DNA of 64,000 bases. Origin: Phallusia mammillata (lineage: Eukaryota). Numbering within the stretch: the first letter of the stretch is position 1; each line of letters begins with the position of its first letter. The notes beneath the pieces were generated by a model. The model saw only the letters and a program-made list of their open reading frames with translations. It had not been told where the DNA came from and ran no database searches. The translations under genes were made by a program, and so were the position numbers. Below, piece after piece: positions 31,420 to 57,416 of the stretch. The stretch is from positions 21,886,001 to 21,950,000 of the forward strand of contig OZ281497.1 in the NCBI GenBank assembly GCA_965637545.1, read 5' to 3'.

Positions 31420-33771
31420 ATGGCTGACGATGAATATCAACAAGAACTTGATTCTAACGATGCACGAGCCGATTTTGAGAACGTCCTACAGGGAATGCTG
31501 GATAAAGCAAATGCCGGTGAAAGGTAAAAATAAAAACGTTGTAATTTGTATTTGTAATTTTAATGCAAATTTTGATTTACTTTTGAATGTATGCTGACAA
31601 GCATTGCTTTTCTTGTTTGTGTTTATCTTTGAATGTTGGCTGCGTTTGGCACTAAAGTAGTAATGCATTGAGGTTCTCCATTCAAAAGTTTTCACGGTGC
31701 TGTAGAAGTTGTTTTATTAGTTTCAGTGCCATTATTCCTGCTGTTAAAGAAGAAGTAATTGACAGCTCACAAGAAGAAACCAGAAAATTGTAAGACTTTG
31801 TTTTGTACAAAATCTTTGATAATTATGCAACTAAAAAGAAATAATTAACCTTCTTTTATTGTGAAAATTTTGTTTACTTTTTAATGCTTTTATATGTATA
31901 TTTAGTCCTGTTACTCCTACCAAATCATCTCGAAAAAGAAAGCGAAAGGAAGAAGGCAAAGATGACAAGCAAAAATCAAGTAAAAATACATTTTTTGTTT
32001 CTACATGTTTGGTTAATGCAGTAAACATTAGGTTAGGTAAAGACAACACACCTTGTTTGAACCTGTAAGTTTCGATCAGTACCGCTGGTGCCAAGCCATT
32101 GGCTGTACAAACTAGTACAGCCAGACTACTGGACTCCTTTTTGAGGCACTTACCTGATGAAAAGTCTGGCCTCACCACATCTTGTGGGTGCCACAACTGC
32201 AAACATTGTTGCATAAATAATATAATTAACCACTTATTCTATTGTTACAGATTCATTTATTATGAAGCTATTTGATCGAAGCATTGACCTTGCTGCATTT
32301 AACGAAGACACGCCACTATATCCCATATGCCGTGCGTGGATGAACAATGATCCTTCAGGCAAAAAAACACCGTTGCGGCCTAAAAAGGGTAGTGACGAGG
32401 AGGCCAACAGTAATGTAGGATCTTATTATGTTTCATATGAAAAGTGAAAGTAAACTTTAGTCATTTATAGTTTTTGTTTTAGAGTGAAGATGAAGACGCA
32501 TCTGGCAATGTTACTGAGATCCCAGCACCTAATGTGAGGTGGAACAATATTGATATTAATGGAAAATATATCAGTCCCAGAGTCCCAGCCACAATGCCTC
32601 ATTCCACTGATAGGTCAGTTTATAATTTCAAGTTATTTTGAATCCATGTTGTGTGCACATAACCAGTAGTTTTCTAAGTCAATGCCAGCACCCCTTTAGT
32701 GGGTGGTTAGAACCAGTGCCAGGATTCAAATTTTTTGTCAGTCGGTTCTATCACAAAAGTTATATTTTTCAGCTAGTTCATTGACTGTAAATCTATTGCT
32801 AGTCACCAATAATGCTAACTGGTTCGCTGATCTCATAAAATTCCTTGAGACGATTTTATAGAACTGGTGCGAACCGGCTGAATACCATCGCTGGTTAAAA
32901 CAGAATACAGCCACAATGGCAATTTGGTCATATATCAGGTGTCAGTGAAATGCCACTATCCTGTTGTTTTTACCAGAGGGGTATTGTGAAATCAACAGTG
33001 GTTAAAAGGTGTGGTAAAGCAAAGTTTGAGAAACACTACAGTATAACACTGGTTTCTTTTCTTGTAGTTTACTACTGAAAATCAATTGTATAAACTTGCA
33101 GCTGTAAAAATTTTGCCAAAGTGTGAAGCAAGACAAATTACATATAGTAAGAAAAGAACAAAGCTCCAATATTACCAGGCCTATTTCATAATAGGTTGTT
33201 TAAATGGAAAAAATCTCCATCCAATATGATTTAGAGTTTTGTTTCTTCTAATGTTTCAGGATCAACGATTATTTTGTCAGCCACGTTTCCCCGCCACCGC
33301 CTGAAACCTTACTAATCAACCACATTCGGCGCTGGAGAGCTATAAGAGAACGGTCGGTGTAATGATCATGAGTTAAACCCTTAACTGTTAAATAAATTTG
33401 ATGTAAGTTTAATCCTTTTCCAAACGGTCGGTGTTATGGTCTTAAATAAACCCTAAAATAAGTTTGATGCTTTTCTAATTCTTCGCTGCATTTCTCCATG
33501 TGGTATTCGTTTACAGTAAATGACTCATTTACTGTTTTCAAACTGCTCTTTCAAGCCTTCCTCAATTTTGCTCGTATTTTAGCAACTTCTTTATTATGAG
33601 CTGAAAATGTAGAAAACGTGAGGCCTATGAGTGTAAACGTACAACGCTTGTACATATTTTTGCAGTTGGACGCAGAAGTCTTGCGAAAATGATGCAAGGT
33701 ATGAAGATGGAATGGTGATACTACGCGACATGTTTAATCGCCAGTTGTATGGAAATTCAGAAAGCCAGTGA
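31420..33771 (+). CDS. LIN37: DREAM/MuvB subunit LIN37; ~7 exons (approx. 31420-31523, 31727-31790, 31906-31980, 32231-32413, 32483-32613, 33260-33352, 33666-33771)
   Basis: ARADFENVLQGMLDK, MKLFDRSIDLAAFNEDTPLYPICRAWM and HIRRWRAIRERW...RYEDGMVILRDMF match conserved LIN37 blocks. Internal exon boundaries are approximate. Confidence 0.88.
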
Positions 33772-41125: not shown

Positions 41126-41733
41126 CTTTTATGCATCATTCATGGCATCTTAATGTATTGCTAATTAATTTAATTTGTGTGAAACAAACAGGTAATGTCG
41201 GTTTTAAATAATTTGTGCTAATTGAAGATAAGTACTTGAATTGCGTCCAATAATTTTAAATAGCATTAAAACGTAGCCTGCATTTATTTATTAGAAAGCG
41301 TCGAATTCCAGCTCTGTTAAGATTTACTAAAATTGATGATAATTCAACGGCAAAACTGGATCTTCAAGTTGGTTGATTGTGCAATGTTCGCTGTGATGGG
41401 TTTTGAAATTCGCAGTAACAGGCCGCAAAATTTTAAAAACGTGCACATTGAGCAACCTGTCTTGCACAGACTGCAATCTTGGTACAAAAACGTGTGTTGC
41501 ACTTCGCACTGCACGACACCGCTGCGGATTATACAAGTGGAAGTTAAGTGGAAAACTTCTGACAAAATCAATTGGTATGCGGCAATACACACAATTGCAC
41601 AAAGCATTTCGCTTCTGTACAATTACGCTACAAGTTCATTTTGTCTCGTAAACCTCTTTTGAATAAAATGTTAACAGATTTATCCTGCTGAAGTTGGCTA
41701 CACTAGCCTATACGCCCCACGTCTTGTCACTAG

Positions 41734-41785
41734 CTGCACTGACGAGACGTTATACAGGTCGAAGCAGTGTGCACTGTCTGCATCT
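41734..41785 (+). ncRNA. Type I hammerhead ribozyme, diverged copy A
   Basis: tgca CTGACGA gac[gttatacag]gtc GAAG cagt[gtgc]actg TC tgca. The core has GAAG instead of GAAA and stem II is weakened. Confidence 0.7.
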
Positions 41786-44692
41786 TACTTATCTCACATA
41801 ATTGTTGCAAAAAATATCTGGCACAGTGAATTCCCCTCAAGAATATGGTGACTTAGTTAACCTTTTTGTTGCCAGCAAAAGTACGTGGCATTGTTATAAC
41901 AAAATGACCCCATAAACAGATTTCATCCCTCAATGAGTTTTAAAACTGTTGCTTTCAGATGTTGTGCACTAATTAAATAAAAAAAAATATGGAAAAACGG
42001 GTTAACATTAAAAAACAACCTATCTTAAGTAAAAAGTCAGGTCAAATGCCCTTCTAAAGTGTGGGTTGGTGTATTTTAAGCTTACAGCGTTGAACTTTAA
42101 AGATTTACGTTACGTAACATTTGTTTATGTCAGCGCGCCAACCTGGCATGGTAGGTTTTGGGCTGACCCACAATTATTTGCTTGCTGCGCGTAGCTACTA
42201 GAATAAAAATCACCGCTTAACAAACCGCAGATCACGAAAGAGCATTTCGTCCAGCTGATTAACGCAATAAAAGACTATTCGTAATTAACGGGTATTAATT
42301 AGACACAAAATCAAATAAGCAACAATGAAAAACGTTCTGGTGGTTACAGATCTTAGTGAAACCATTGACATCTGATTGGGGCGCCTTAATGTTGCACCCG
42401 CAGCTTATATCTATATTTGATCTTCAAGTTTAAACCAAGTATATCGAATCCTCACAATCATCTTATGCATGACCTTTGTGTAGTGGCGAGTATGAGGAAA
42501 GTTATCTTGAGTAAACCATGAAGAAATGTGCGAACGGGACGTTTATATGATGAAAAAGACCACTAAATGTTTTCGATGCAATTTAAATTAGGCCCACTTG
42601 CAAAAAAAAAACACATACAGAAAACATTTGAAGAAGGAAAAATGGAGATGCTATTGATTATTTTACATAAGCTCTTGAAAACATTGTTTTCCTTGTAAAC
42701 ACTTGCCTTGTAAACACTGTTTATATGGAAAACAGGGGGCTATTTTAGGCAACCAAGCAAATTATTAGTAAAAATCTGGGCGTGGCCCGGTATAAAGGAT
42801 TACGTAACCAATAGCAACGACTTATGAACTCAAAAATAACAGCAGATTACCTAACTTTCAAAACTGAAGCACCTTTAGCAAATGATGTACGTTTTGCCCG
42901 ACCGACATTCGACCCTTGTAAATGTCAACATGGAAATAGGATAACTTGCCTAATTATTTAATCTCGTAACTTTGTGGTCACCCTGCGTCAATTCTTGCTA
43001 TTCCAACTAATTACAATAATCACTGTAGGCAATCTCCTCGTTAGTACACAAAAGACCAAAATTCGACATCCGCTTGTGTAAAAGTCGGCCGCCAAAATGA
43101 CCTCATGTTTACCAGCTAATTGCTACCTGATATGAAATCAATGTAACTTACGACGTTACAACTAAACGATCTTTAACGCGTCTTTCCCATTCTGCACGAC
43201 TTGGCGGCCGAACACCGGTTGCAAAACCAACGGATGCCTGGTAGGGTTATATAAGACTACCTTATGTGGGAAATTAATTTCTCTCATAGGCATTTGAGCT
43301 TTCATACACAACTGTGCAAGGCACCCCTTAACCTCTGTATATCATTACTAAGCCATATTTCGTGAGCTTGTTGTTGCTTGTCACTATTAAACTGTCACGA
43401 AGTGGATGTTCAAACGCTAATACAGAGCCGCGCATAATATTTAAGGCTAATTTCAAACCCTAAATATCTTTTCTAAACAACACCGTTTCAATTTCCTATT
43501 GACTGTTCCTATAGACCTCTGATTGTGAACTCAATGAACTAGACTTTCTACTTTGTACTGTTCTGTTTCACTGCAAAAGATACAACACTCTGACATGCAA
43601 AATCCAAGCATTAGATCGTTTCAAATGCAATTATTCGCGTCGTCATAAACTGGGTTGTAATCCTATTCACAAAGTGCGTTACTAATTTCCACGCTCTTTC
43701 GTCTGTTTGCAAAACACCGACCGACGGCGACATAAGAGCACTATTGAAGAGCAATGACGAGCAGAGACAGGTTATAATCCCAGCAATGGCACGTTGCTAT
43801 TGTTCCGCTGCGATTTTAGAACTTTGTCTCCGGGGGGAAAATTCTGTGAGCTTTACAAAATCGCCTTCCGCACTGGAAGATTGGTTGAACGCCCTTCGCC
43901 AGATAAAAGCTTTTCCCACGATCCCGGCCGACGAGCAAAGGGCCTGTAAAGCCCGCCCGACGCATTTTGACCTCTCTCTCTGTCCCTGCCCTTGTCCCCC
44001 CAAATCATAAGTGACTGCGTAAAACAATAGTATGGCGCTTTACGTGGGTTTTAGGTAAACAATAATAAACATGGGGTATATGGAGATGATTGATAATAAT
44101 CAACGAATAGGATAAGGATAACCGCGCTACTACGTTTTGCTGAGATTATTAATATGGTTTAAATTAATTTAAGACCGACTGATGCAATAAACTAGTAAGC
44201 GAAAATGTTCGGAATTTGAGTTTTTAGGAATTTTTTGTCTTAGTTAGGAGTGCTACATTAGCATTGCACAAACAAAAAACAACAACACTTTTTTAAACTG
44301 TGATAAGGCGTTTTAATGATTTCATTTATCGTTATTCTTATATTTACTACAGCTGTCGTGACGATTGCAGCTCATTGCACGTGACCGCACCAATTGTTCG
44401 GCGAAGTAGAGTGTTCCAGGTATTGTTTGTATCTGTTATTGTCTCGCCGATTTATGACAAGATAGCATTATTGTCTCACAGGAAATTTGTTCAAAAGCAA
44501 GTTGGTTTAAATTTAAATGAACGCATTTTTTAAAAATACAATCATGATGCGTAGTTACTCAACAACGCCAAACATTTAAAAGCACCAACTTTCGGTGCAA
44601 TACAACACTAATTTTGTTTTTCAGTTCATTTTAAACTAGAGGCGTGAGACCACTTTACTAGAGTTTCAGTTTCGGATAGATAAAGCCTAGGG

Positions 44693-47840: not shown

Positions 47841-50800
47841 TTAGTTTTCGACAATTCTTTTCAAGGCCTTTTCGACCTCACGGCGTACTAATGCCTCACC
47901 TGTGAAAATAATGTTCGACATGAATATCCAAGTATTATAGTGGGCTACAAAAATGTTTCTAAGCGTTGCAACAAATACATTAGCTTTTTACAAGCCAATG
48001 TGACCCGTATTTCCAAATTTAGTTCGTTTATTCAAAAATTTAGTTTCGTTTACTTTAAATACATTAGTTGGCGAAGTAAAAAAAACATGCTTAAGATTTA
48101 ATGCACAAAATATGTATCCCTATTCAGTTTTTTTATGTGTTTTGTACATGTGTATTATGTTTCAAGGTCGCTTTTAGTCTACACAAAAACAATCATCTTA
48201 TTCACGTATCGCGTGGCGGCGCTGTTGAGGCTCTTTCGGAGGCGGCTTAATCGGTTCCAGCTCTTGAACAGACAAGCACTTCATAGTTTCCATGTAGACG
48301 TTTGAAACCCTGGTTCCTGGGACCTCCTCGCCGGTACATGTGTCCACGCACCAGCAATCTACCCAGTAACACTGCTGGGCGGTGTACAAGCCATCTTCGT
48401 TGCAGCTAGGCTTAAACGGACCGTCCTGAACCTGCCCTTCAAGTTGTTCTGCATCATGGCGCTGTTGCTCGCATTGTGTGAGCTCGACCAGCTCTTGCTC
48501 CTCTTCACTCTTTGCTCCGCTTTCCTCTGCGTGTCACGTGAGGGGGTATTGACCAATAACACGCAAGGCGGGAATGCCAGTGTGCCTGTGTGAGCGCATG
48601 CGATTGCTCTTTTGTATTTTTTTCGTGCATGTTGTTGTGCTGAACTGCGATTGTTTGCTTTGGCGTCAACTAACACTACAAATTGCTGAGCATTCGGGCA
48701 AGCAAGTTTGCCATGAGGTAAAGTTACTCTTTTGTGAGCGCATGCGTTTGCTGTGTTGTGATTTTGCGTACGTGATTTTTTTCGTGCATGTTGTGCTAAT
48801 ATGCGGCTGTTTGCTTTGTCGTCTAGTAACACTACAAATTGCTAGGCATTCAGGCAAACAAGTTTGCCAGGAGGATAGGTTACTCTTTTGTGAGCGTTTG
48901 TGTCAAGATAAGTTTCAACTCGGTTAAAATGTGCAACCACTACTTCGAGCTTGGAAAGCAATTTTTTAAATCGGGCCCGATTGTAACCATTTTGGGAACC
49001 TTAATTATTGGTTTGAGAACCACATCCAATATCGCCTAAATTGGAATACAAATTAACTTTGGTGCAGTGTCTACCAATCTTACCTGCACATTCGCACATG
49101 TCGCAGCCATTTTGGTCTTTAGCTAATCCCATTGTACAACCCATCATCTCCGCATTGCATGAGTGATATGGACAAGGAATTAGCTCTGGTCCTAAAACAA
49201 CAAAGCAAAAATAACCGTGCAACTATCAACCGGTGATGGCAGCGTTACAGATTTGTGGTTAATTTTGTGATTACTTCTTTGGCAACTTGTAAGGAACTAA
49301 AATGAAGTATTGATTACACCTAAACCTAGGTAAATTTTTGGGCCCTATTTAGCAATATATGCAATGTGTTTAATTGTTTACAACTAAACTTTGCCCTTTT
49401 TATCTCATATTTCTTGTGTTGTATCTGGTGCAGGGGCGGGGAACCTACTTTGTACTGCGGGCCGCATAAATTGCACAACATTTTCCGGCGGGCCAAATAT
49501 TTATTTATTTTCAAATTCTGTGTAAAAATACCCAAAGCACACAAGTGGTTTTATATTTTATCGCTCCATATTTAATTTTTTCTTTGCTGCTACATGTTTG
49601 CAACAAACAAGGCATAAAGGTTTATCACTGATTTCAACACATGGCAAATGATTTGTTACTGCAGGGAGAGGCAATCTAGTGACTGTTACGTCACAATTGT
49701 ATAGCAAGCGGTTGAATGCGTGGCATTTTTTGTAGGTTTTACGTCATAATGTGGAATGGGGAGTTATTGAACATAAATTACCAATAATGTCGAGGTCATT
49801 TCTAGGAAATATTTGTAAATAAACATAAAACTGTTTTTTATGCTTTGTGTTATACTTAAACAAAAATCTGACAGGGGCCACATTAAAAAGGCAAGCGGGC
49901 CGCAGGTTCCCCACCACTGATCTAGTGCATTAAGGACAAAGGTAGCTGGTCAAACAATTAAAGTTTAAACCAATCATATTTTTCATTGACTATAGTTCAC
50001 GCCCACTTTAACGCGAATTTTTAACCAGTAGAGTTGTTGTCCAAGGATGCGTAGTAAACAGGTGACCTAATTAATCCTTTGCTGGAGGCGTGAGAAAGCG
50101 GTAGCAAGATAGTTTTTGTTTGCCCAAAAAGTTGACTACGTGGCATAATTGACTTGGCGAATAAATATCTCAGGCTTTTTAACCCGATATTTACTGACTA
50201 CGCAAACATCGGTATCTTATCGTCCTACTGGCGAGTAATTAACCAGGCTGGATCAGGTATACGAGCTCGTTAACCAAGGCATGGAATTCCAAAATTGCGT
50301 GAGATTTTTCGCCACTTTTATCTAACCTGGGAACACTCGCACACAAATCCACTAATATTTTACTTGTGGAACACCGCTGCAAGTATCTGCACGTTGCGAC
50401 AGACAAAATATTAAATCTGATCATTAGTTTAAGTTCTGCTTAGTGAAAATATGATCTTTATCTAAACGCGATACGTTGTTTTTTCGAATTTTTTGTAGAG
50501 CATGATCGCATACCTTCTGCACATTCGCAGAGATCGCAACCGTTCTCGTTTTGAGCTAGTCCGTTGCTACATCCCATGTTTTCAGCAGTGCAAGCGTGGT
50601 ATGGGCAAGGTATAAGAACTTCATTTCCCCCTGTAACACGAAAAGAAAGATTTCTAAAACCCCAAAACGCCAGCAATGACAAAAAATGCTTCAAGCTGAA
50701 TTAACAGCGTAAAAACGCAAAAAATTTTTGGTTACAGAAGCAAAAAACTAAACGTTAGAAAACTTGCACACGGAAACGGACGGCCCGACTTACCGACAGC

Positions 50801-53800
50801 ACATTCGCAGAGTTCACATCCATTTTCATTCTTAGCCAGGCCCAATTCACACCCGAGCATTTCGGCTGTACAGGCATGCGCTTGACAAGGAATGGCCGGC
50901 TCTTCAACTACATTTCCCCCCTCTGACAAAGCACCAGGTTTGCTTTTGAAACCGCACACGGTGGAACATTCGTCCATGGTCTGTTTGGGAAGTCGTTACA
51001 CCGTTGTTAATTGGTGTTTGACTAGTTTTGCGATTTCGACACATGTGTAATGAAAGAGTTTTAGGGGAGACAATTCTTGAAGTTATGAGAATTGTTTCCA
51101 AAAACGTTTAAAGAAACCACTAAAATTAACAGTGAAAATTAAAATCTGTTTAATTTAACAGTTTTACAGTTACTGCTTTTTACTAATGTCACGTTTCAAA
51201 ATGATTTAAAAACACTTCTCTTGCTAAACGTCTGTGTTCAAAATACACTTCATTAAAATAATGTATGTAATGAGTTTATCCCGTAAATAAGTACAGATAA
51301 ATAACGCTAAGGATAAAGGTATAGAAAATCTTTGCCTCAAAGTTGTTGTTATTTCCGTTGCAACCGCCATAGATGAATTTCTTACAATGAGCGGCTGCTC
51401 TGTCGTAGTAATACCTCAAGTGATTACCTCTACACGGCCCTTGTTCAGGAACTAACATACATGCTCCCCTAAAATCAAAACACGGTAAATTATAAATGCA
51501 AAACTATATATATACCATATACATTATGATTTAGTTTATTATAAATAGCGAATGAGGCCTAAGATTTTTTTTACGATTGGCGCACTTTCTCATTAAAATG
51601 GTAATTTTTTTATTCAACTTTCGGACTTGCGATTGGTTGAAAAGAGCCAATTAATTTATATGTTACGGCTTTTGGAGATTTAAATGTGATCAAGTTTAGC
51701 GAAGGTCTTAAACAAAGAATATTCTCATGCAAATAGAAATCTTGAACTCAAACAAAACTCACTTGTCAACAGATTCGCTAGATGAACGCGGCTCCTTTTC
51801 AAGCATTGCACATTGGCAAGTGTCACATCCACGTTCGTCCTTTGCGAGTCCGAATTCACATCCAAACATCTCCGCAGTGCAAGCATGCAGCGGGCAGGCA
51901 AGCGGCTCTTCAATCACATTTCCCCCTTCTGATAAAGAGAACAGTGCACAAGATTATCAGTGTTGTCAGCGAAGTAAAATACCAATAAACATTGAAGTTA
52001 GAAAAGTTGACAAGGAGGTTATTGGCCCTACTCACCGCCTGCACATTCGCAAAGATCGCATCCGTAGGCATTTTTAGCCAATCCCCGTTCACATCCCAAC
52101 ATTTCAGCAGTACATGCATGCAATGGGCAACCGACTTCAACCCCATTTCCTTCTGACAAAGCACCAGCTTTGCTTTTGAAACCGCAAACGGTGGAACATT
52201 CGTCCATGGTCTGTTTGATAAAGTTTGTGTTTGTTAAAGTTCTGTTTCGACACTGCTGTAGGGATTAAGATTTTTGTACAAAACACTTATTAAAGTTTAA
52301 AAATACAATTACTTGGCTATGTTGGGAAAAAAGTGTGTGGAATTGGTTAACCATTGAAATAAGAGTACCCTACTATATTTAAACATTTATCCTGTGAAAG
52401 AGTACAAAAAAAATACGTTGGGCATAAAGGTACCGTGTATCTTTTTTACCAGTTATATTTACCTCGAAATTGTTGTTATTTCCGTTGCAACCTCCGTAGA
52501 AGAACTTTTTACAGTGAGCGGCTGCTCTGTCGTAGTAGTACCTCTCGTGACTACCTTTGCACGGCCCTTGTTCAGGAACTAACATACATGCTCCCCTGTA
52601 AATAAAAACCACGACAAGTTTTACATTCGAAATCAATTATCAGGTGTGAGTTTTGTTAATTATCATAACAATGTATCGAATCCAACAGCTTTGTATGATC
52701 GCCAAAGACTCTGTTTCAAATATAGTTGGGACTTTTAGACGCGCGATTATCAGCAAAAAAATAATATAATTTAGTCCCGAGCCCAAAATGTTTCTTTTGG
52801 GTTTAAATATGACCAGGTTTGACCATGGCCTTACTAACCCAAGAGTGAACATCCTTATTCAAATAGAAAAGTGTAAATTCAAACAACACCTACTTGTCGA
52901 CAGTTTCGCTGGAGGCTCGCGGTTCCTTCTCAAGGATTGCACATTGGCAAGTGTCGCATCCGCGTTCGTCCTTTGCAAGTCCGAACTCACATCCAAACAT
53001 CTCCGCGGTGCAGGCATGCAGCGGACAGGCAAGCGGCTCTTCAATCACATTTCCTCCCTCTGACAAACGCAAAGTTTACCAGTGTTTTCAGGCAAGTAAA
53101 TACCCAACAATCAGTAATTAAAACGTTTAATAACTTGTCATGGAAACTTTTTCTTAACACTCACCGCCAGCACACTCGCAAAGATCGCATCCGTTTGCGT
53201 TTTTAGCCAGTCCTCGTTCACATTGCAACATTTCAGCAGTACACGCGTGCAGTGGACAAGCGACAAGAGGCTCTTCAACCAAATTCTCCTTGCTTTTTAA
53301 ACCGCAGACGGTGGAACATTCGTCCATGGTCTGTTTGATAAATCGTAACAAAGGTGTTAGTTCGTGTTTATACGCTTTGCTGTTTCGACACAGTTGTAAT
53401 GATGACGAGTTATATAACACTTGTCGAAGTTTAAGAAACAATTGCTTGGATATGCTGTGACGAAAGTGTATGCTAATTGGTTAATTATTGAAATAAGAAT
53501 ACTATTTAAAAGTTTGTGCTGTTAAAGAGCAAAGAAAGATTAAGATGGGGATATAGATAAAGAGGATATTTTCACAAACAATTGAATTCACCTCAAAATT
53601 GTTGTTATTTCCGTTGCAACCTCCGTAGAAGAATTTTTTACAGTGAGCGGCTGCTCTGTCGTAGTAATACCTCTCGTGACTACCTTTGCACGGCCCTTGT
53701 TCAGGAACTAACATACATGCTCCCCTGTGAATCAAAAACAGGGAAAATTTTACATTCAAAATCAATTATCAGTTGTGAGCTATTAGGTTATGATAAAAAT

Positions 53801-56800
53801 ACATGTAACCAGGTTTGGTTAAAGTATTATAATAGCAGAAGAATATCCTTATTCAAATAGAAAATTGTGAACCCAAACAAAACTTACTTATCGACAGTTT
53901 CGCTCGAAGAACGCGGTTCTTTCTCAAGGAGTGCACATTGGCAAGTGTCGCATCCACGTTCGTCCTTTGCCAATCCAAATTCACATCCAGCCATTTCAGC
54001 GGTACAAGAATGTAGCGGACAAGGAACTAATGGTTGTTCGACTACATTTCCCTCCTCTGACAAAAGCACAATATACGTGATGGTTACCAATATTGTACAC
54101 TGTTACCAGATAAGTAATTTATCAACAAACAAACATCATTTTGTAGCAACCCGGTTTGTGGATCCCAATGTTTAAAATTGGATTGGTTTTTGAAATGTCT
54201 TAACATCGAAATCGTAATAATTTTTGGCTAATCTAACTGGTGGCTAGATATATTGGCTTGAACAAGAGCAACATAAAGGATTGTTATAACTGTAATTGTA
54301 AAGTCATTTCGAAAACCGATTTTTATAACTGTAATTGTAAATAAGATACTTGAATCCAGTGGAGTCGGGTTGCAAATTTTTTAACCGACTTTACAACCTT
54401 GAGAAAAAACGCTTTTTTAGAAATATAACTCCGGTTATTGAGCACGATTGTTTCAAAACGGTTCTAGTCTCCATTACTGCAAAATTGTTATTGCCCGAAG
54501 TCAGATTTGTCAAACCATTTAAGGTTTTCATCAGAGTAAACATTCGCTAAACATGAAAAAGCGATGAATACTGCGTTCGGATTTCTAAAAACGTTTTTTT
54601 GGAAGGCGCACAAAAGCACAACACCCACCACTTTCGGGTTCGGGCCGGGTTCGGGCTCGACTTCCAGGCCCGTTTACAACTCTGAGCACAACACCTATCA
54701 ACACTAACCTTCACATTCACACAGTGTGCATCCGTAATAGTTGGTCTTCAGTCCAGTACCAGCGGCACAGTTAAGAATTTCCGGAGTGCACCCGTGAAGC
54801 AAACAAGGAGCCGGTTTTGGTTCCTCGACAGCAGCTTTGCTTTTCAAACCGCAAGCGACGGAACATTCTTCCATAGTCTGTTTGCGAAATCGTAACACTG
54901 GAGTTAGTAGATGTTTGCTAAGGTTCGATTTATCGCATAATGACAACGCTTTATAGGTAGCTAACATGAAAAATTACTATTCGGGTTTATTGGGGCAAAG
55001 CCTATGATCAACTTGTTGTGAAATTTGTGAAAAAGTTTGTTTAACTCAAACTTATGAACAAAGAACAAAGCGTTTTTTTACAATTTGAATATTGGTAAAT
55101 TTAATATTTGGGCAGAAAACCGCGCATGTTATAATTACCGTATATACTCGCTAATAGGTCGCGCCACCGTATAGGTCGCGCCACCGTATAGGTCGCACTG
55201 TTAGTTTTGTGTTAAAAAAGTTTAATTTAGAGTTGACTCGCACATAAGTCGCACTGAAAATCTAGGGATTTAAAAGGCCCTTTCCCTAGCTTTTTTGGTT
55301 GCAATTGTTTGTTTTTTAGCATTGAACTGCATTGCATTGAAACCGCAAAACCATTTTTTCTCAACAAAGTGGGAAAATCCAATGCACGCTGAGCGGTCGC
55401 ATGTGCGTGTGCGCTCATGAAACTGTCTCGCATTGGTATGTGCGTGCACGAGCGCATGCACCCGTATTTGCACTTATGTCGAGCGGATAGGTCGCACCTA
55501 TAATTTTTTTTTTTAAATATAAGCAAAAAAGTTGCGACCTATCCGCGAGTATATACGGTATAGATACAGACGAAAACTTTTTTCATCAGCAGTTAACCTC
55601 AAAGTTGTTTGCATTTCCGTCGCATCCGCCGTAGAGAAACTTTTCACAATGCGCGGCAGCTCGGTTGTAGTAATACCTGATGTGCTGGGCTTTGCATCGT
55701 CCCTGCTCGGGTAGCAACATACAAGCTCCCCTAACGATAAAACACCGTTCTTAATTTCAAAACTTGTGTAAACCTGTTTTAGATATGAGCAAGATTTGTT
55801 TTAGATTTGTCTCTGGTTTACACCTTTGATTTAAACCAAGTTATCAGTTTGTTTTTCAAGGTAAAAAGCATCGAATGGAAAACGCCCGTTATAACTTAAT
55901 GAATACAATATTAAAGAAAAAATAAAGTTGTATTATAGCTTCTCCAGACCGAAACCATTTTCCAAGTTCAGGAACAAAACGTTTTCATACTCAAATTAAA
56001 TTGGTTTGGAAACGAAAAAAAAACTTATTCGAACAGAATCGGAAAAACGTCACTTACTTGTCGATAGATCCGCTGGAGGCACGTGGTTCCTTTTCAAGGC
56101 CTGCTTAAACGTGATAAAATTAGTGTTTCAACAAATGGAGCAAACTTTCATTTAAAACTCAATCTTTGACTCATACCCTTTAGTTACCTTTATGCGGCGT
56201 CTTTCCGAAAGCCGAGTCGATTTCTGGAAAACAATGATATTTTAGGTTTAATTGAAGTAGGTTGATCGTAAGCATAACCTAACGCAGTGATTCTCAAACG
56301 CGGCTCCCAAATATTCATTTTGCTGCTAACACCACCCCTCAGAAAACCACCAAAGATTGCTATTTTTTGTAAAAGCATAGAGCCAATAAATGATAAGCTG
56401 CAGACAGTGCACACTGAGTTGCTTGGCCATTGTGAGCCAGTTTCATCTGTGCTGTATGTCCAGTTGTGGTATCGCACAGACTAGGTGATGCATGGGGTTG
56501 TGCCCTGTGCTCCCAACAAACTGGAGTGCCGTTGAATGGCTACACTAGCCAATGCGGCCGATCTCTCGTCACCAGCTGCACTGATGAGACCTTATAGGTC
56601 GAAACAGTGTGCACTGTCTGCAGATTGCTATTTTAGCTTTCAAAGTAATAATCTTTAATGATTTTCTCAAGGTTTCGTTTTTTTTGCGGCTCCCTACACA
56701 CTTGGCCCCGATAATAAAAAAGTTTGACGTAACGTACGTGTTAAAAATTATAACAAGACTAAATAGCATTGACATATACCTGCGCATTCACAAACTGGAC

Positions 56801-57416
56801 ATCCACGGACTTGCTTCAGCTCTGCACAACCGAGAGTCTGTGCTGTGCAGGCGTGGAAAGTGCATGCCTTTTCCGAACGAGTATTCACCTGACGAACAAA
56901 AATTCTTAATCCAAGAGAATACAACCAAAAATCTATATCTATAAACTGTGTACCAACCTTTTCGTTATCTTCCAAGATCGTATTCAACTGTAATGCAGCA
57001 TAATTTAAATTAATTGAAACGAATGTGTATAAAAGCATTAGTGTATAAAAGCAAAGGTTTTTGGCAAAATCGTTACATTTTTGAGCTAGTCTAGTTATTT
57101 GGGATTCCCCAACCGTTCGTGACAAAAATTCCTCCACTTACCGCGTTCCGTAGTGCAACAATCTGCAAAAATAGTTCAAAAATAATTTCATGTTAATAAG
57201 CAATATCAGATAAAAATCACGTTATGTTATGCAAAATATGACGAATAAACAGCATGCAAAGGATAAAAAATCACCTTTTCCTTGCTATTGTCGGTCGTTC
57301 CATACGCACAACCTAAACACAAAAAATAGTTTAAAAAATATTTTGTTTTTTTAACCCAAAAATATGCAAGACCTACCACAAAACATCAACGTTACGATGA
57401 TGTACAAAACCTTCAT
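47841..57416 (-). CDS. Secreted multidomain protease inhibitor: signal peptide, 4 Kunitz, 10 antistasin-like, 1 thyroglobulin type-1 domain
   Basis: Signal peptide MKVLYIIVTLMFCGCAYG. Kunitz exons at ~55593-55731, 53592-53726, 52463-52597 and 51335-51469 (C..P..G.CK/RG...YYY......C..F.YGGC.GN.NNF | ..EC...C). Antistasin-type CxxxxC..C..G..GCxxCxC exons. TY exon 48526-48206 (PSC..DG.Y...QC...CWCVD..TGEE). Last exon ends with TAA at 47841. Confidence 0.85.
48587..48900. repeat. Intronic tandem duplication (~150-bp unit, 2 copies + fragment)
   Basis: TGTGAGCGCATGCG...TTTTTTCGTGCATGTTG...TAACACTACAAATTGCT...GTTACTCTTTTGTGAGCG repeated from 48587, 48733 and ~48889. Confidence 0.8.
49431..49919. 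mobile_element. hAT MITE
   Basis: TIR CAGGGGCGGGGAACC / GGTTCCCCACCACTG; TSD atctggtg/atctagtg. Confidence 0.85.
55138..55558. mobile_element. Tc1/mariner (pogo-like) MITE
   Basis: TIR CCGTATATACTCGC / GCGAGTATATACGG flanked by TA; internal 16-bp tandem ATAGGTCGCGCCACCG. Confidence 0.85.
56367..56621. mobile_element. ~255-bp hammerhead-bearing insertion (Penelope-like/retrozyme-like) with 13-bp TSD
   Basis: AGATTGCTATTTT at 56354-56366 and 56622-56634. 19-nt perfect inverted repeat 56398-56416 / 56605-56623. Lies inside a truncated hAT MITE (left TIR at ~56285). Confidence 0.75.
56576..56623 (+). ncRNA. Type I hammerhead ribozyme, intact core (copy B); predicted cleavage after GUC at 56618
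   Basis: Stem I ctgca/tgcag; CTGATGA; stem II gacc[ttata]ggtc; GAAA; stem III cagt[gtgc]actg; TC. All consensus core nucleotides and three helices are present. Confidence 0.9.

What the first reader, a model, noticed from the sequence alone, without database searches (positions are those of the whole stretch)
56354..56634. Intact type I hammerhead inside a 255-bp TSD-flanked insertion with inverted ribozyme ends
Seen: a complete consensus hammerhead at 56576-56623 (+). Its stem III, cleavage site and stem I' recur as a perfect 19-nt inverted copy at 56398-56416. On the minus strand that copy is preceded by a broken core (gca-CAGATGA...tggc/gcca), i.e. a decayed second ribozyme pointing the other way. 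The insertion is bounded by a 13-bp direct repeat and ends at the ribozyme 3' strand. Known: metazoan type I hammerheads occur in Penelope-like element pLTRs (often with inverted partial copies) and non-autonomous retrozymes, which insert by target-primed reverse transcription. Inference: a non-autonomous ribozyme retroelement. The intact ribozyme is antisense to the host inhibitor gene, and the upstream inverted copy could mask its cleavage site in a plus-strand transcript.
Basis: partly seen in the sequence, partly recalled or inferred. Interest (0 to 1): 0.85.

Follow-up and report, generated by a model that had tools for sequence, protein, structure and literature searches.

The report
Hammerhead retrozyme insertion in an intron
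This is one recent, dead-end insertion of a small non-coding jumping element that carries a self-cutting hammerhead ribozyme; it is real and cleanly documented, but it belongs to a kind already described in other animals (retrozymes that depend on Penelope-like elements).

Summary
The sequence facts hold. A complete type I hammerhead lies at 56576-56623 (+). It has a 19-nt perfect inverted copy at 56398-56416 and a 13-bp direct repeat at both ends.

The insertion is one copy of an abundant young family: a 282-bp tandem unit with one hammerhead each, and 326 exact copies of the 38-nt core in this 240-Mb genome.

Twenty bounded insertions share one layout of two diverging, 5'-truncated arms. One arm ends at +36/37 after the cleavage site, the other at +5 to +13. 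Seventeen have exact 12-15 bp target duplications.

Four paralogous copies of the repeat it landed in run straight through with a single copy of the 13-mer, so the duplication is proven.

This is the published insertion signature of Penelope-like elements (PLEs). Intact PLEs (973-aa RT plus GIY-YIG) are present in the genome.

The "decayed second ribozyme" is wrong. The inverted piece is a truncated arm. The CAGATGA stretch is a normal internal segment of every unit, complementary to the ribozyme core.

With only one ribozyme, in an intron and antisense to a Kunitz/antistasin gene, this copy is probably inert.

Earlier notes of this scan describe hammerhead retrozyme insertions elsewhere in this genome.

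Verdict: a new member of a known kind.

The parts
56354..56366 (.). Left copy of the 13-bp target-site duplication (AGATTGCTATTTT)
   Evidence: Exact direct repeat. Four paralogous copies of the surrounding host repeat carry this 13-mer once, uninterrupted.
56368..56416 (-). Inverted, severely 5'-truncated arm: the reverse complement of unit positions about -14 to +37 around the cleavage site. Its outer end is the 'tail' end (+36/37); 56367 is one extra T.
   Evidence: 96% match to the tandem unit in reverse orientation. The same tail end is seen in the other two-armed insertions.
56417..56623 (+). Direct 5'-truncated arm: unit +81 to +282, then TGCAG (+1 to +5). The last AG is shared with the target duplication (2-nt microhomology).
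   Evidence: 97.6% identity over 210 bp to the tandem unit; alignment with other copies.
56576..56623 (+). Type I hammerhead ribozyme motif, with predicted cleavage after C56618
   Evidence: Sequence read; sub-threshold covariance-model alignments with every core position matched; pattern seen once in the window against 0 in shuffles; 326 exact copies of the 38-nt core genome-wide, 0 for the reversed control.
56441..56453 (+). Internal anti-core segment of the unit (GTTTCATCTGTGC), complementary to GCACTGATGAGAC of the ribozyme.
   Evidence: Present in every tandem unit. It pairs with the ribozyme core in the predicted fold of the insertion.
56622..56634 (.). Right copy of the 13-bp target-site duplication
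56273..56366 (.). Left half of an unrelated interspersed repeat into which the element inserted
   Evidence: Matches many loci at 84-89% identity, all ending at the insertion point.
56622..56727 (.). Right half of the same host repeat
   Evidence: Matches many loci at 83-99% identity. It is contiguous with the left half, with a 13-bp overlap, in L051, L052, L054 and L055.
55589..55720 (-). Kunitz-type exon of the host gene, downstream of the insertion in gene orientation
   Evidence: Translation. A sister exon hits Pfam Kunitz_BPTI at E=1.3e-15.
56781..56867 (-). Antistasin-like exon of the host gene, upstream of the insertion in gene orientation
   Evidence: BLASTP E=2e-07 to an exon that hits Pfam Antistasin. 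It has no Pfam hit of its own at E<=0.01.

Best explanation
The stretch 56367-56621 is a single insertion of a non-autonomous, non-coding retroelement of the metazoan non-LTR retrozyme kind. The master form is a 282-bp head-to-tail repeat with one type I hammerhead per unit.

Inferred life cycle, by analogy with published retrozymes: tandem transcripts cut themselves after GUC into 282-nt monomers. These are ligated into highly self-paired circles. Circular or multimeric RNA is then copied back into DNA by the reverse transcriptase / GIY-YIG endonuclease of a Penelope-like element.

Shown here: each insertion consists of two diverging cDNA-like arms between a 12-15 bp target duplication. One arm starts at +36/37 after the cleavage site. 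The other starts at +5 to +13, with a few bases of microhomology to the target. Both arms are 5'-truncated at variable points.

Inferred from that: both staggered nicks primed reverse transcription. The template was uncut or circular, because both arms read across the cleavage site.

The window copy has a 49-nt inverted arm and a 207-nt direct arm. It landed in another interspersed repeat, inside an intron of a Kunitz/antistasin gene, and is antisense to that gene. With one ribozyme, no second cleavage site and a stem I cut to 5 bp by the insertion boundary, it cannot release a circle. It is most likely inert at this site.
For: - Tandem unit of 282 bp, 4.3 copies, 98% matches, one hammerhead each.
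- 326 exact copies of the 38-nt core against 0 for the reversed control. In the first 100 places listed there are 19 close head-to-head (-,+) pairs against 1 (+,-) pair.
- At least 147 family matches from 2447 first-look candidates, mostly 98-99% identical.
- The two-armed layout has a different junction in each copy.
- 17 of 20 bounded insertions have exact 12-15 bp target duplications, where random 37-mer pairs share about 5.
- The outer ends lie at +36/37 and at +5 to +13.
- Paralogous empty sites carry a single 13-mer.
- No ORF longer than 140 aa lies in or near the arrays, and the unit has stops in all frames.
- The 282-nt circle is predicted to fold at -95.7 kcal/mol, z about -4.5.
- Intact PLEs are present: a 973-aa ORF with RVT_1 and GIY-YIG, three copies 99.7% identical, 159-bp pLTRs, and the same head-to-head layout with 8-13 bp duplications.
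- The literature describes the same kind. Tandem type I hammerhead repeats of about 150-450 bp are non-LTR retrozymes with target duplications larger than 4 bp, and they co-occur with PLEs (PMC7229834; bioRxiv 10.64898/2026.07.22.740005).
- PLE insertions have an inverted 5'-truncated copy at the 5' end and a 30-40 bp tail at one end only (PMC8557442).
Against: - No cleavage, circular RNA or transcription data can be obtained here.
- Rfam scores stay below the gathering thresholds (22.8 against 34 bits).
- The family is too young and uniform to show covariation.
- The 973-aa PLE shares no sequence with the retrozyme, and its pLTR ribozyme-like motif is different, so the actual partner element is not identified.
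- PLE duplications seen here (8-13 bp, two cases) are a little shorter than the retrozyme's 12-15 bp.
Confidence: 0.85

Rival explanations
1. The 282-bp unit is not an independent retrozyme. It would be the pseudo-LTR of an autonomous Penelope-like element, and the window copy a solo or severely truncated PLE insertion.
For: PLE pLTRs carry hammerheads and give the same inverted / tandem / tail architecture (PMC8557442). In Xenopus, retrozymes are sister to pLTRs (bioRxiv 10.64898/2026.07.22.740005). Some copies lie 1-6 kb from GIY-YIG matches.
Against: Arrays of up to 4.3 units have no ORF between or beside them. There is no similarity to the 973-aa PLE or to 12 other GIY-YIG loci, apart from one independent insertion with its own target duplication. 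Only 90 GIY-YIG matches were listed and few could be fetched, so a matching PLE family cannot be excluded.
Confidence: 0.08
2. A foldback or MITE-like DNA transposon whose terminal inverted repeats happen to include a hammerhead-like sequence.
For: A 29-nt inverted repeat and a flanking direct repeat.
Against: The left arm of the inverted repeat lies 21 nt inside the left boundary. The inversion junction and the arm lengths differ in every copy. The duplication length varies from 12 to 15 bp. The family's main form is a head-to-tail tandem repeat.
Confidence: 0.02
3. Mobilisation by a LINE-type reverse transcriptase with L1-like twin priming, rather than by a PLE.
For: Variable 5' truncation, target duplications of more than 10 bp, microhomology at one end and 5' inversions are also seen with L1 twin priming (established knowledge, not tested here).
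Against: There is no poly(A) or simple-repeat tail. Nearly every bounded insertion is two-armed, not a minority. The two arms overlap in content. A defined tail of about 37 nt at one end only matches the PLE description (PMC8557442).
Confidence: 0.05

Closest known systems
Metazoan non-LTR retrozymes (Cervera & de la Pena 2020, PMC7229834; Li, Clavereau & Pollet 2026, bioRxiv 10.64898/2026.07.22.740005)
   Same: Short tandem repeat (282 bp) with one type I hammerhead per unit. No coding capacity, LTR, PBS or PPT. GC below 50%. Target duplications much longer than 4 bp. Predicted highly self-paired circle. Co-occurs with PLEs.
   Different: The host appears to be a tunicate (named by an earlier scan note, not verified by me). 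Neither paper's text as searched mentions ascidians or tunicates. Helix III is long (5 bp plus a tetraloop). Expression and circularity are untested. Many copies are short two-armed solo insertions rather than arrays.
Penelope-like element insertions and pLTR hammerheads (Craig et al. 2021, PMC8557442, which cites Cervera & de la Pena 2014)
   Same: Inverted 5'-truncated copy abutting the 5' end. A 30-40 bp tail at one end only (here about 37 nt). Partial tandems, variable 5' truncation, and a hammerhead near the 3' end.
   Different: There is no RT/EN ORF. The hammerhead is a full-size motif, not the minimal short-helix-III variant. There is no sequence similarity to the PLE examined in this genome.
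Newt satellite 2 and Schistosoma Sm-alpha hammerhead repeats (from my own knowledge; the newt case is summarised in PMC7229834)
   Same: Tandem or dispersed repeats of a few hundred bp that encode type I hammerheads and are transcribed into self-cleaving monomers.
   Different: The amphibian motifs have a 1-2 bp helix III and work as dimers. This motif should be able to fold as a monomer.
L1 twin-priming 5' inversions (established knowledge)
   Same: Both nicked target strands appear to prime reverse transcription, giving an inverted 5' part, a direct 3' part and a flanking duplication.
   Different: Here the two arms overlap in content, both start at defined positions next to the ribozyme, there is no poly(A), and the layout is the rule rather than a minority.

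Membership tests
Hammerhead ribozyme, type I (Rfam RF00163) | Conserved core: CUGANGA, GAAA, the A15.1-U16.1 pair, and a cleavage-site nucleotide that is not G (here GUC) | tested here: met
   All positions are present at 56581-56618. The covariance-model alignments match every core column.
Hammerhead ribozyme, type I (Rfam RF00163) | Three-way junction with stems II and III closed by loops and stem I open | tested here: met
   Stem II is 5 bp with a 3-nt loop. Stem III is 5 bp with a 4-nt loop. Stem I is 5 bp in the window copy and 7 bp in tandem units.
Hammerhead ribozyme, type I (Rfam RF00163) | Score at or above Rfam's gathering threshold | tested here: not met
   No gathering-level match in the window. 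Hammerhead_1 scores 22.8 bits against 34 in the tandem context, full length 1-45. The long helix III insert and the stem sequences cost score. A whole-genome RF00163 search was uninformative because its controls also failed.
Hammerhead ribozyme, type I (Rfam RF00163) | Loop 1 - loop 2 tertiary contacts and actual self-cleavage | not testable with these tools
   Needs in vitro transcription and cleavage mapping. In the window copy the native 3' strand of stem I beyond 5 bp is replaced by target DNA.
Metazoan non-LTR retrozyme | Head-to-tail repeats of about 150-450 bp, each with one type I hammerhead | tested here: met
   282-bp period, 4.3 copies at 98%. Hammerheads lie at 282-bp spacing in three arrays.
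Metazoan non-LTR retrozyme | Non-coding, with no LTR | tested here: met
   Longest open stretch is 53 codons across the circle. No ORF over 140 aa in the array loci.
Metazoan non-LTR retrozyme | Target-site duplications larger than 4 bp, showing real insertion events | tested here: met
   17 of 20 insertions have exact 12-15 bp duplications. Paralogous empty sites exist for the window copy.
Metazoan non-LTR retrozyme | Co-occurrence with Penelope-like elements in the same genome | tested here: met
   90 GIY-YIG matches. Intact 973-aa ORF with RVT_1 plus GIY-YIG and pLTRs.
Metazoan non-LTR retrozyme | Expressed as small, highly self-paired circular RNA | not testable with these tools
   Only a prediction is available: the circular fold is -95.7 kcal/mol, z about -4.5.
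Autonomous Penelope-like element (pLTR fragment) | RT plus GIY-YIG ORF flanked by the repeat | tested here: not met
   No ORF in or beside the arrays. No similarity between the unit and the PLE loci examined.
Autonomous Penelope-like element (pLTR fragment) | Insertion architecture: inverted 5'-truncated copy at the 5' end, and a 30-40 bp tail at one end only | tested here: met
   The same layout occurs in a PLE copy of this genome (L048).
MITE / foldback DNA transposon | Terminal inverted repeats at both termini and a fixed-length duplication | tested here: not met
   The left repeat arm is internal, the junction is variable, and duplications range from 12 to 15 bp.

The most novel reading that the evidence does not exclude
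The family is currently active. Its uniform two-armed insertions would then record the still-undefined Penelope-type integration reaction at single-nucleotide resolution. One arm is always primed at +36/37. The other is primed at +5 to +13 with microhomology. The staggered nicks lie 12-15 bp apart, and the arms overlap in content. In this reading, both nicked target strands prime reverse transcription on a circular or multimeric ribozyme RNA, and rolling-circle copying generates the tandem arrays.
Probability: 0.4. Interest if true: 0.5.

Novelty: new member of a known kind. Interest (0 to 1): 0.3.

Why it matters
The finding adds a well-documented, young and abundant hammerhead retrozyme family in what earlier notes call an ascidian, a group not mentioned in the retrozyme papers I could search. 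Because the element is tiny, whole insertion events are visible: both ends, the junction and the target duplication. That gives a clean data set for working out how Penelope-like elements integrate, which the literature calls undefined. For this particular locus the consequence is small. It is an inert, antisense, intronic copy that should not cut the host pre-mRNA.

Tried and rejected
- Rfam at gathering threshold on the whole window found nothing.
- A whole-genome search with RF00163 gave no matches, but the tool's own controls also failed, so it is uninformative.
- My own simple type I hammerhead scanner found nothing in the PLE loci. The PLE pLTR motif has an irregular stem II, and I did not pursue it.
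- The search for the autonomous partner did not succeed. The unit has no similarity to the 973-aa PLE or to 12 GIY-YIG loci.
I did not try to get those letters another way.
- Covariation could not be assessed: the 18 distinct hammerhead variants in the fetched loci differ only by scattered single changes.
- I looked for a paralogous empty site inside the window and found none. It was then found genome-wide.
- Organism identity was not settled. A paper on a related Phallusia species gave no usable figures. I verified only an intron-bearing animal-type genome of 240 Mb, with contig numbers up to C8 for the large pieces cited here.
- 'Decayed second ribozyme' is rejected, as explained above.
- A rolling endless ORF on the 282-nt circle (282 = 3 x 94) is rejected: there are stops in all six frames.

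Full report
**1. Observation**

The plus strand at 56576-56623 reads as a complete type I hammerhead:
- stem I: CTGCA (56576-80) pairs with TGCAG (56619-23);
- core: CTGATGA (56581-87);
- stem II: GACCT / TAT / AGGTC (56588-56600);
- GAAA (56601-04);
- stem III: 5 bp closed by a GTGC loop (56604-17);

The core pattern CTGATGAG-N6-20-CGAAAC occurs once in the 64-kb window and in none of 100 shuffles.

Rfam gives nothing at gathering score. With permissive thresholds, the RAGATH-1 hammerhead model aligns over exactly 56576-56623 (21.1 bits) and Hammerhead_3 scores 21.5 bits. In the family's native tandem context, Hammerhead_1 aligns over its full length at 22.8 bits against a cut-off of 34. The loss comes from the long helix III and the stem sequences, not from the core.

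The 13-nt direct repeat (56354-66 and 56622-34) is exact. The inverted repeat is 29 nt at 86% complementarity and includes the 19 perfect bases.

**2. It is one copy of a large, young family**

The insertion matches at least 147 places in the window's own 240-Mb assembly, from 2447 first-look candidates. Most matches cover query positions 51-260 at 98-99% identity and lie 282 bp apart.

Tandem Repeats Finder reports a 282-bp period, 4.3 copies and 98% matches in one array. Reading the array shows one hammerhead per unit.

The 38-nt ribozyme core occurs 326 times exactly (162 forward, 164 reverse). The reversed-pattern control gives 0.

The unit has no coding capacity: the longest open stretch around the circle is 53 codons, and there is no ORF over 140 aa in or beside the arrays. 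Its GC content is 48.9% against 38.7% for the window.

As a circle, the 282-nt RNA is predicted to be strongly self-paired, at -95.7 kcal/mol and z about -4.5 against shuffles.

**3. Anatomy of the insertion**

I number the unit from the cleavage site (+1 = T of TGCAG). The window copy then consists of:
- 56368-56416: the reverse complement of -14 to +37;
- 56417-56623: +81 to +282, followed by +1 to +5.

The 43 nt from +38 to +80 are absent.

Other copies have the same two-armed, head-to-head layout, but the junction is different in each. These are therefore independent events, not copies of one rearranged master.

Across 20 bounded insertions, 17 have exact flanking duplications of 12-15 bp, where random 37-mer pairs share about 5.

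In the cases inspected, one outer end lies at +36/37 (...GCTTTTACA). The other lies between +5 and +13, usually with 0-5 nt of overlap with the duplication. In the window the shared bases are the AG of TGCAG.

In the first 100 genomic places of the exact core, there are 19 close (-,+) pairs against 1 (+,-) pair. The diverging arrangement is therefore the rule.

**4. Proof of insertion**

Both flanks of the window copy belong to another interspersed repeat. The left flank 56273-56366 and the right flank 56622-56727 each match dozens of loci.

In four fetched copies (L051, L052, L054, L055) the two halves are contiguous and overlap by exactly 13 bp. They read ...CCAAAGATTGCTATTTTAGC... with one copy of the 13-mer.

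**5.

There is no decayed second ribozyme.

The inverted piece is simply a short 5'-truncated arm.

The CAGATGA and tggc/gcca letters lie in the direct arm (about unit +81 to +116). They are present in every tandem unit, where no inverted arm is nearby.

The segment 56441-56453 is complementary to the ribozyme's GCACTGATGAGAC: 12 of 13 positions pair, one of them a G-U. It pairs with that stretch in the predicted fold. Its reverse complement therefore looks like a damaged core. This is the self-pairing expected of retrozyme RNA, not a relic.

**6. Context**

The minus strand carries a multi-domain protease-inhibitor gene. Its exons hit Pfam Kunitz_BPTI (E=1.3e-15) and Antistasin (E=1.4e-06 and 3.9e-05).

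A Kunitz exon lies at 55589-55720. An antistasin-like exon lies at 56781-56867.

The insertion is therefore intronic and its ribozyme is antisense to the gene. The host pre-mRNA carries only the complement of the ribozyme, plus a core-less sense fragment, so it should not be cut.

**7. Mechanism**

The published descriptions fit point by point:
- Metazoan non-LTR retrozymes are tandem repeats of about 150-450 bp with type I hammerheads.
- They have low GC and target duplications larger than 4 bp.
- They are expressed as self-paired circular RNAs and found together with PLEs (PMC7229834).
- A 2026 preprint argues that they derive from PLE pLTRs (10.64898/2026.07.22.740005).
- PLE insertions are 5'-truncated, often have an inverted 5'-truncated copy abutting the 5' end, and carry a 30-40 bp tail at one end only (PMC8557442).

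This genome holds at least 90 GIY-YIG matches. It also holds an intact canonical PLE:
- three copies 99.7% identical, with 159-bp pLTRs;
- one copy with the same head-to-head layout;
- duplications of about 8-13 bp.

I infer that PLE machinery copies uncut multimeric or circular retrozyme RNA from both staggered nicks. The uncut or circular template is inferred because both arms read across the cleavage site and overlap in content.

The partner is not identified. The PLE I examined shares no sequence with the unit, and its pLTR motif is different. Further PLE loci could not be fetched.

**8. This copy**

It is 97.6% identical to the array unit and has a perfect duplication, so it is fairly recent.

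It has one ribozyme only, so it cannot release a monomer. Its stem I is cut to 5 bp by the insertion boundary, against 7 bp plus further pairing in tandem units.

In a plus-strand read-through transcript, the predicted fold sequesters stem III, the cleavage site and stem I in the 19-bp helix with the inverted arm. The core is sequestered by the anti-core segment. The fold energy is -110.8 kcal/mol, z = -5.0.

Most likely the copy is inert.

**9. Novelty**

The kind is known. Papers I could search do not mention retrozymes in ascidians. One ascidian genome paper only lists 9 type I hammerhead loci (PMC8704543).

Earlier notes of this scan already describe hammerhead retrozyme insertions elsewhere in this genome and name the animal as Phallusia mammillata. 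I did not verify the species.

Noticed in passing
window 41695-41787 (+): An older, 5'-truncated copy of the same family, about 86% identical over 93 bp. Its core reads CTGACGA, and GAAG replaces GAAA (A15.1 changed). Probably inactive.
   Followed up: partly
window 32047-32143 (-): A much older decayed copy, about 69% identical, with a broken core (CTGATCGA ... CAAA). So the family, or its ancestors, have been inserting here over a long time.
   Followed up: partly
window 56273-56366 and 56622-56727: The retrozyme landed in another interspersed repeat of about 190 bp. That repeat has hundreds of copies (503-640 first-look candidates) at 83-89% identity, a few at 96-99%. It contains repeated GCGGCTCCC motifs. 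I did not classify it.
   Followed up: partly
L047:3645-7068 (G000 C3, about 16.09 Mb); also L046 and L048: An apparently intact canonical Penelope-like element: 973-aa ORF (RVT_1 plus C-terminal GIY-YIG), 159-bp pLTRs, three copies 99.7% identical, duplications of about 8-13 bp. Each pLTR holds a hammerhead-like motif (CTGATGA...GAAATTAAT...) with an irregular stem II, which I did not validate.
   Followed up: partly
window about 48300-57140 (-): A long tandem series of alternating Kunitz and antistasin-type exons: a multi-domain serine-protease-inhibitor gene with at least five modules.
   Followed up: partly
L047:7698-8767: A tandem repeat with a period of about 61 bp (85-89% between copies), just downstream of the PLE copy.
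   Followed up: no
L036:81-306 (G000 C1, about 4.271 Mb): Another two-armed retrozyme insertion with its own 14-bp duplication. It lies about 1 kb downstream of a 314-aa GIY-YIG-bearing ORF. A near-identical PLE fragment (L035) lacks it, so the proximity looks coincidental.
   Followed up: yes
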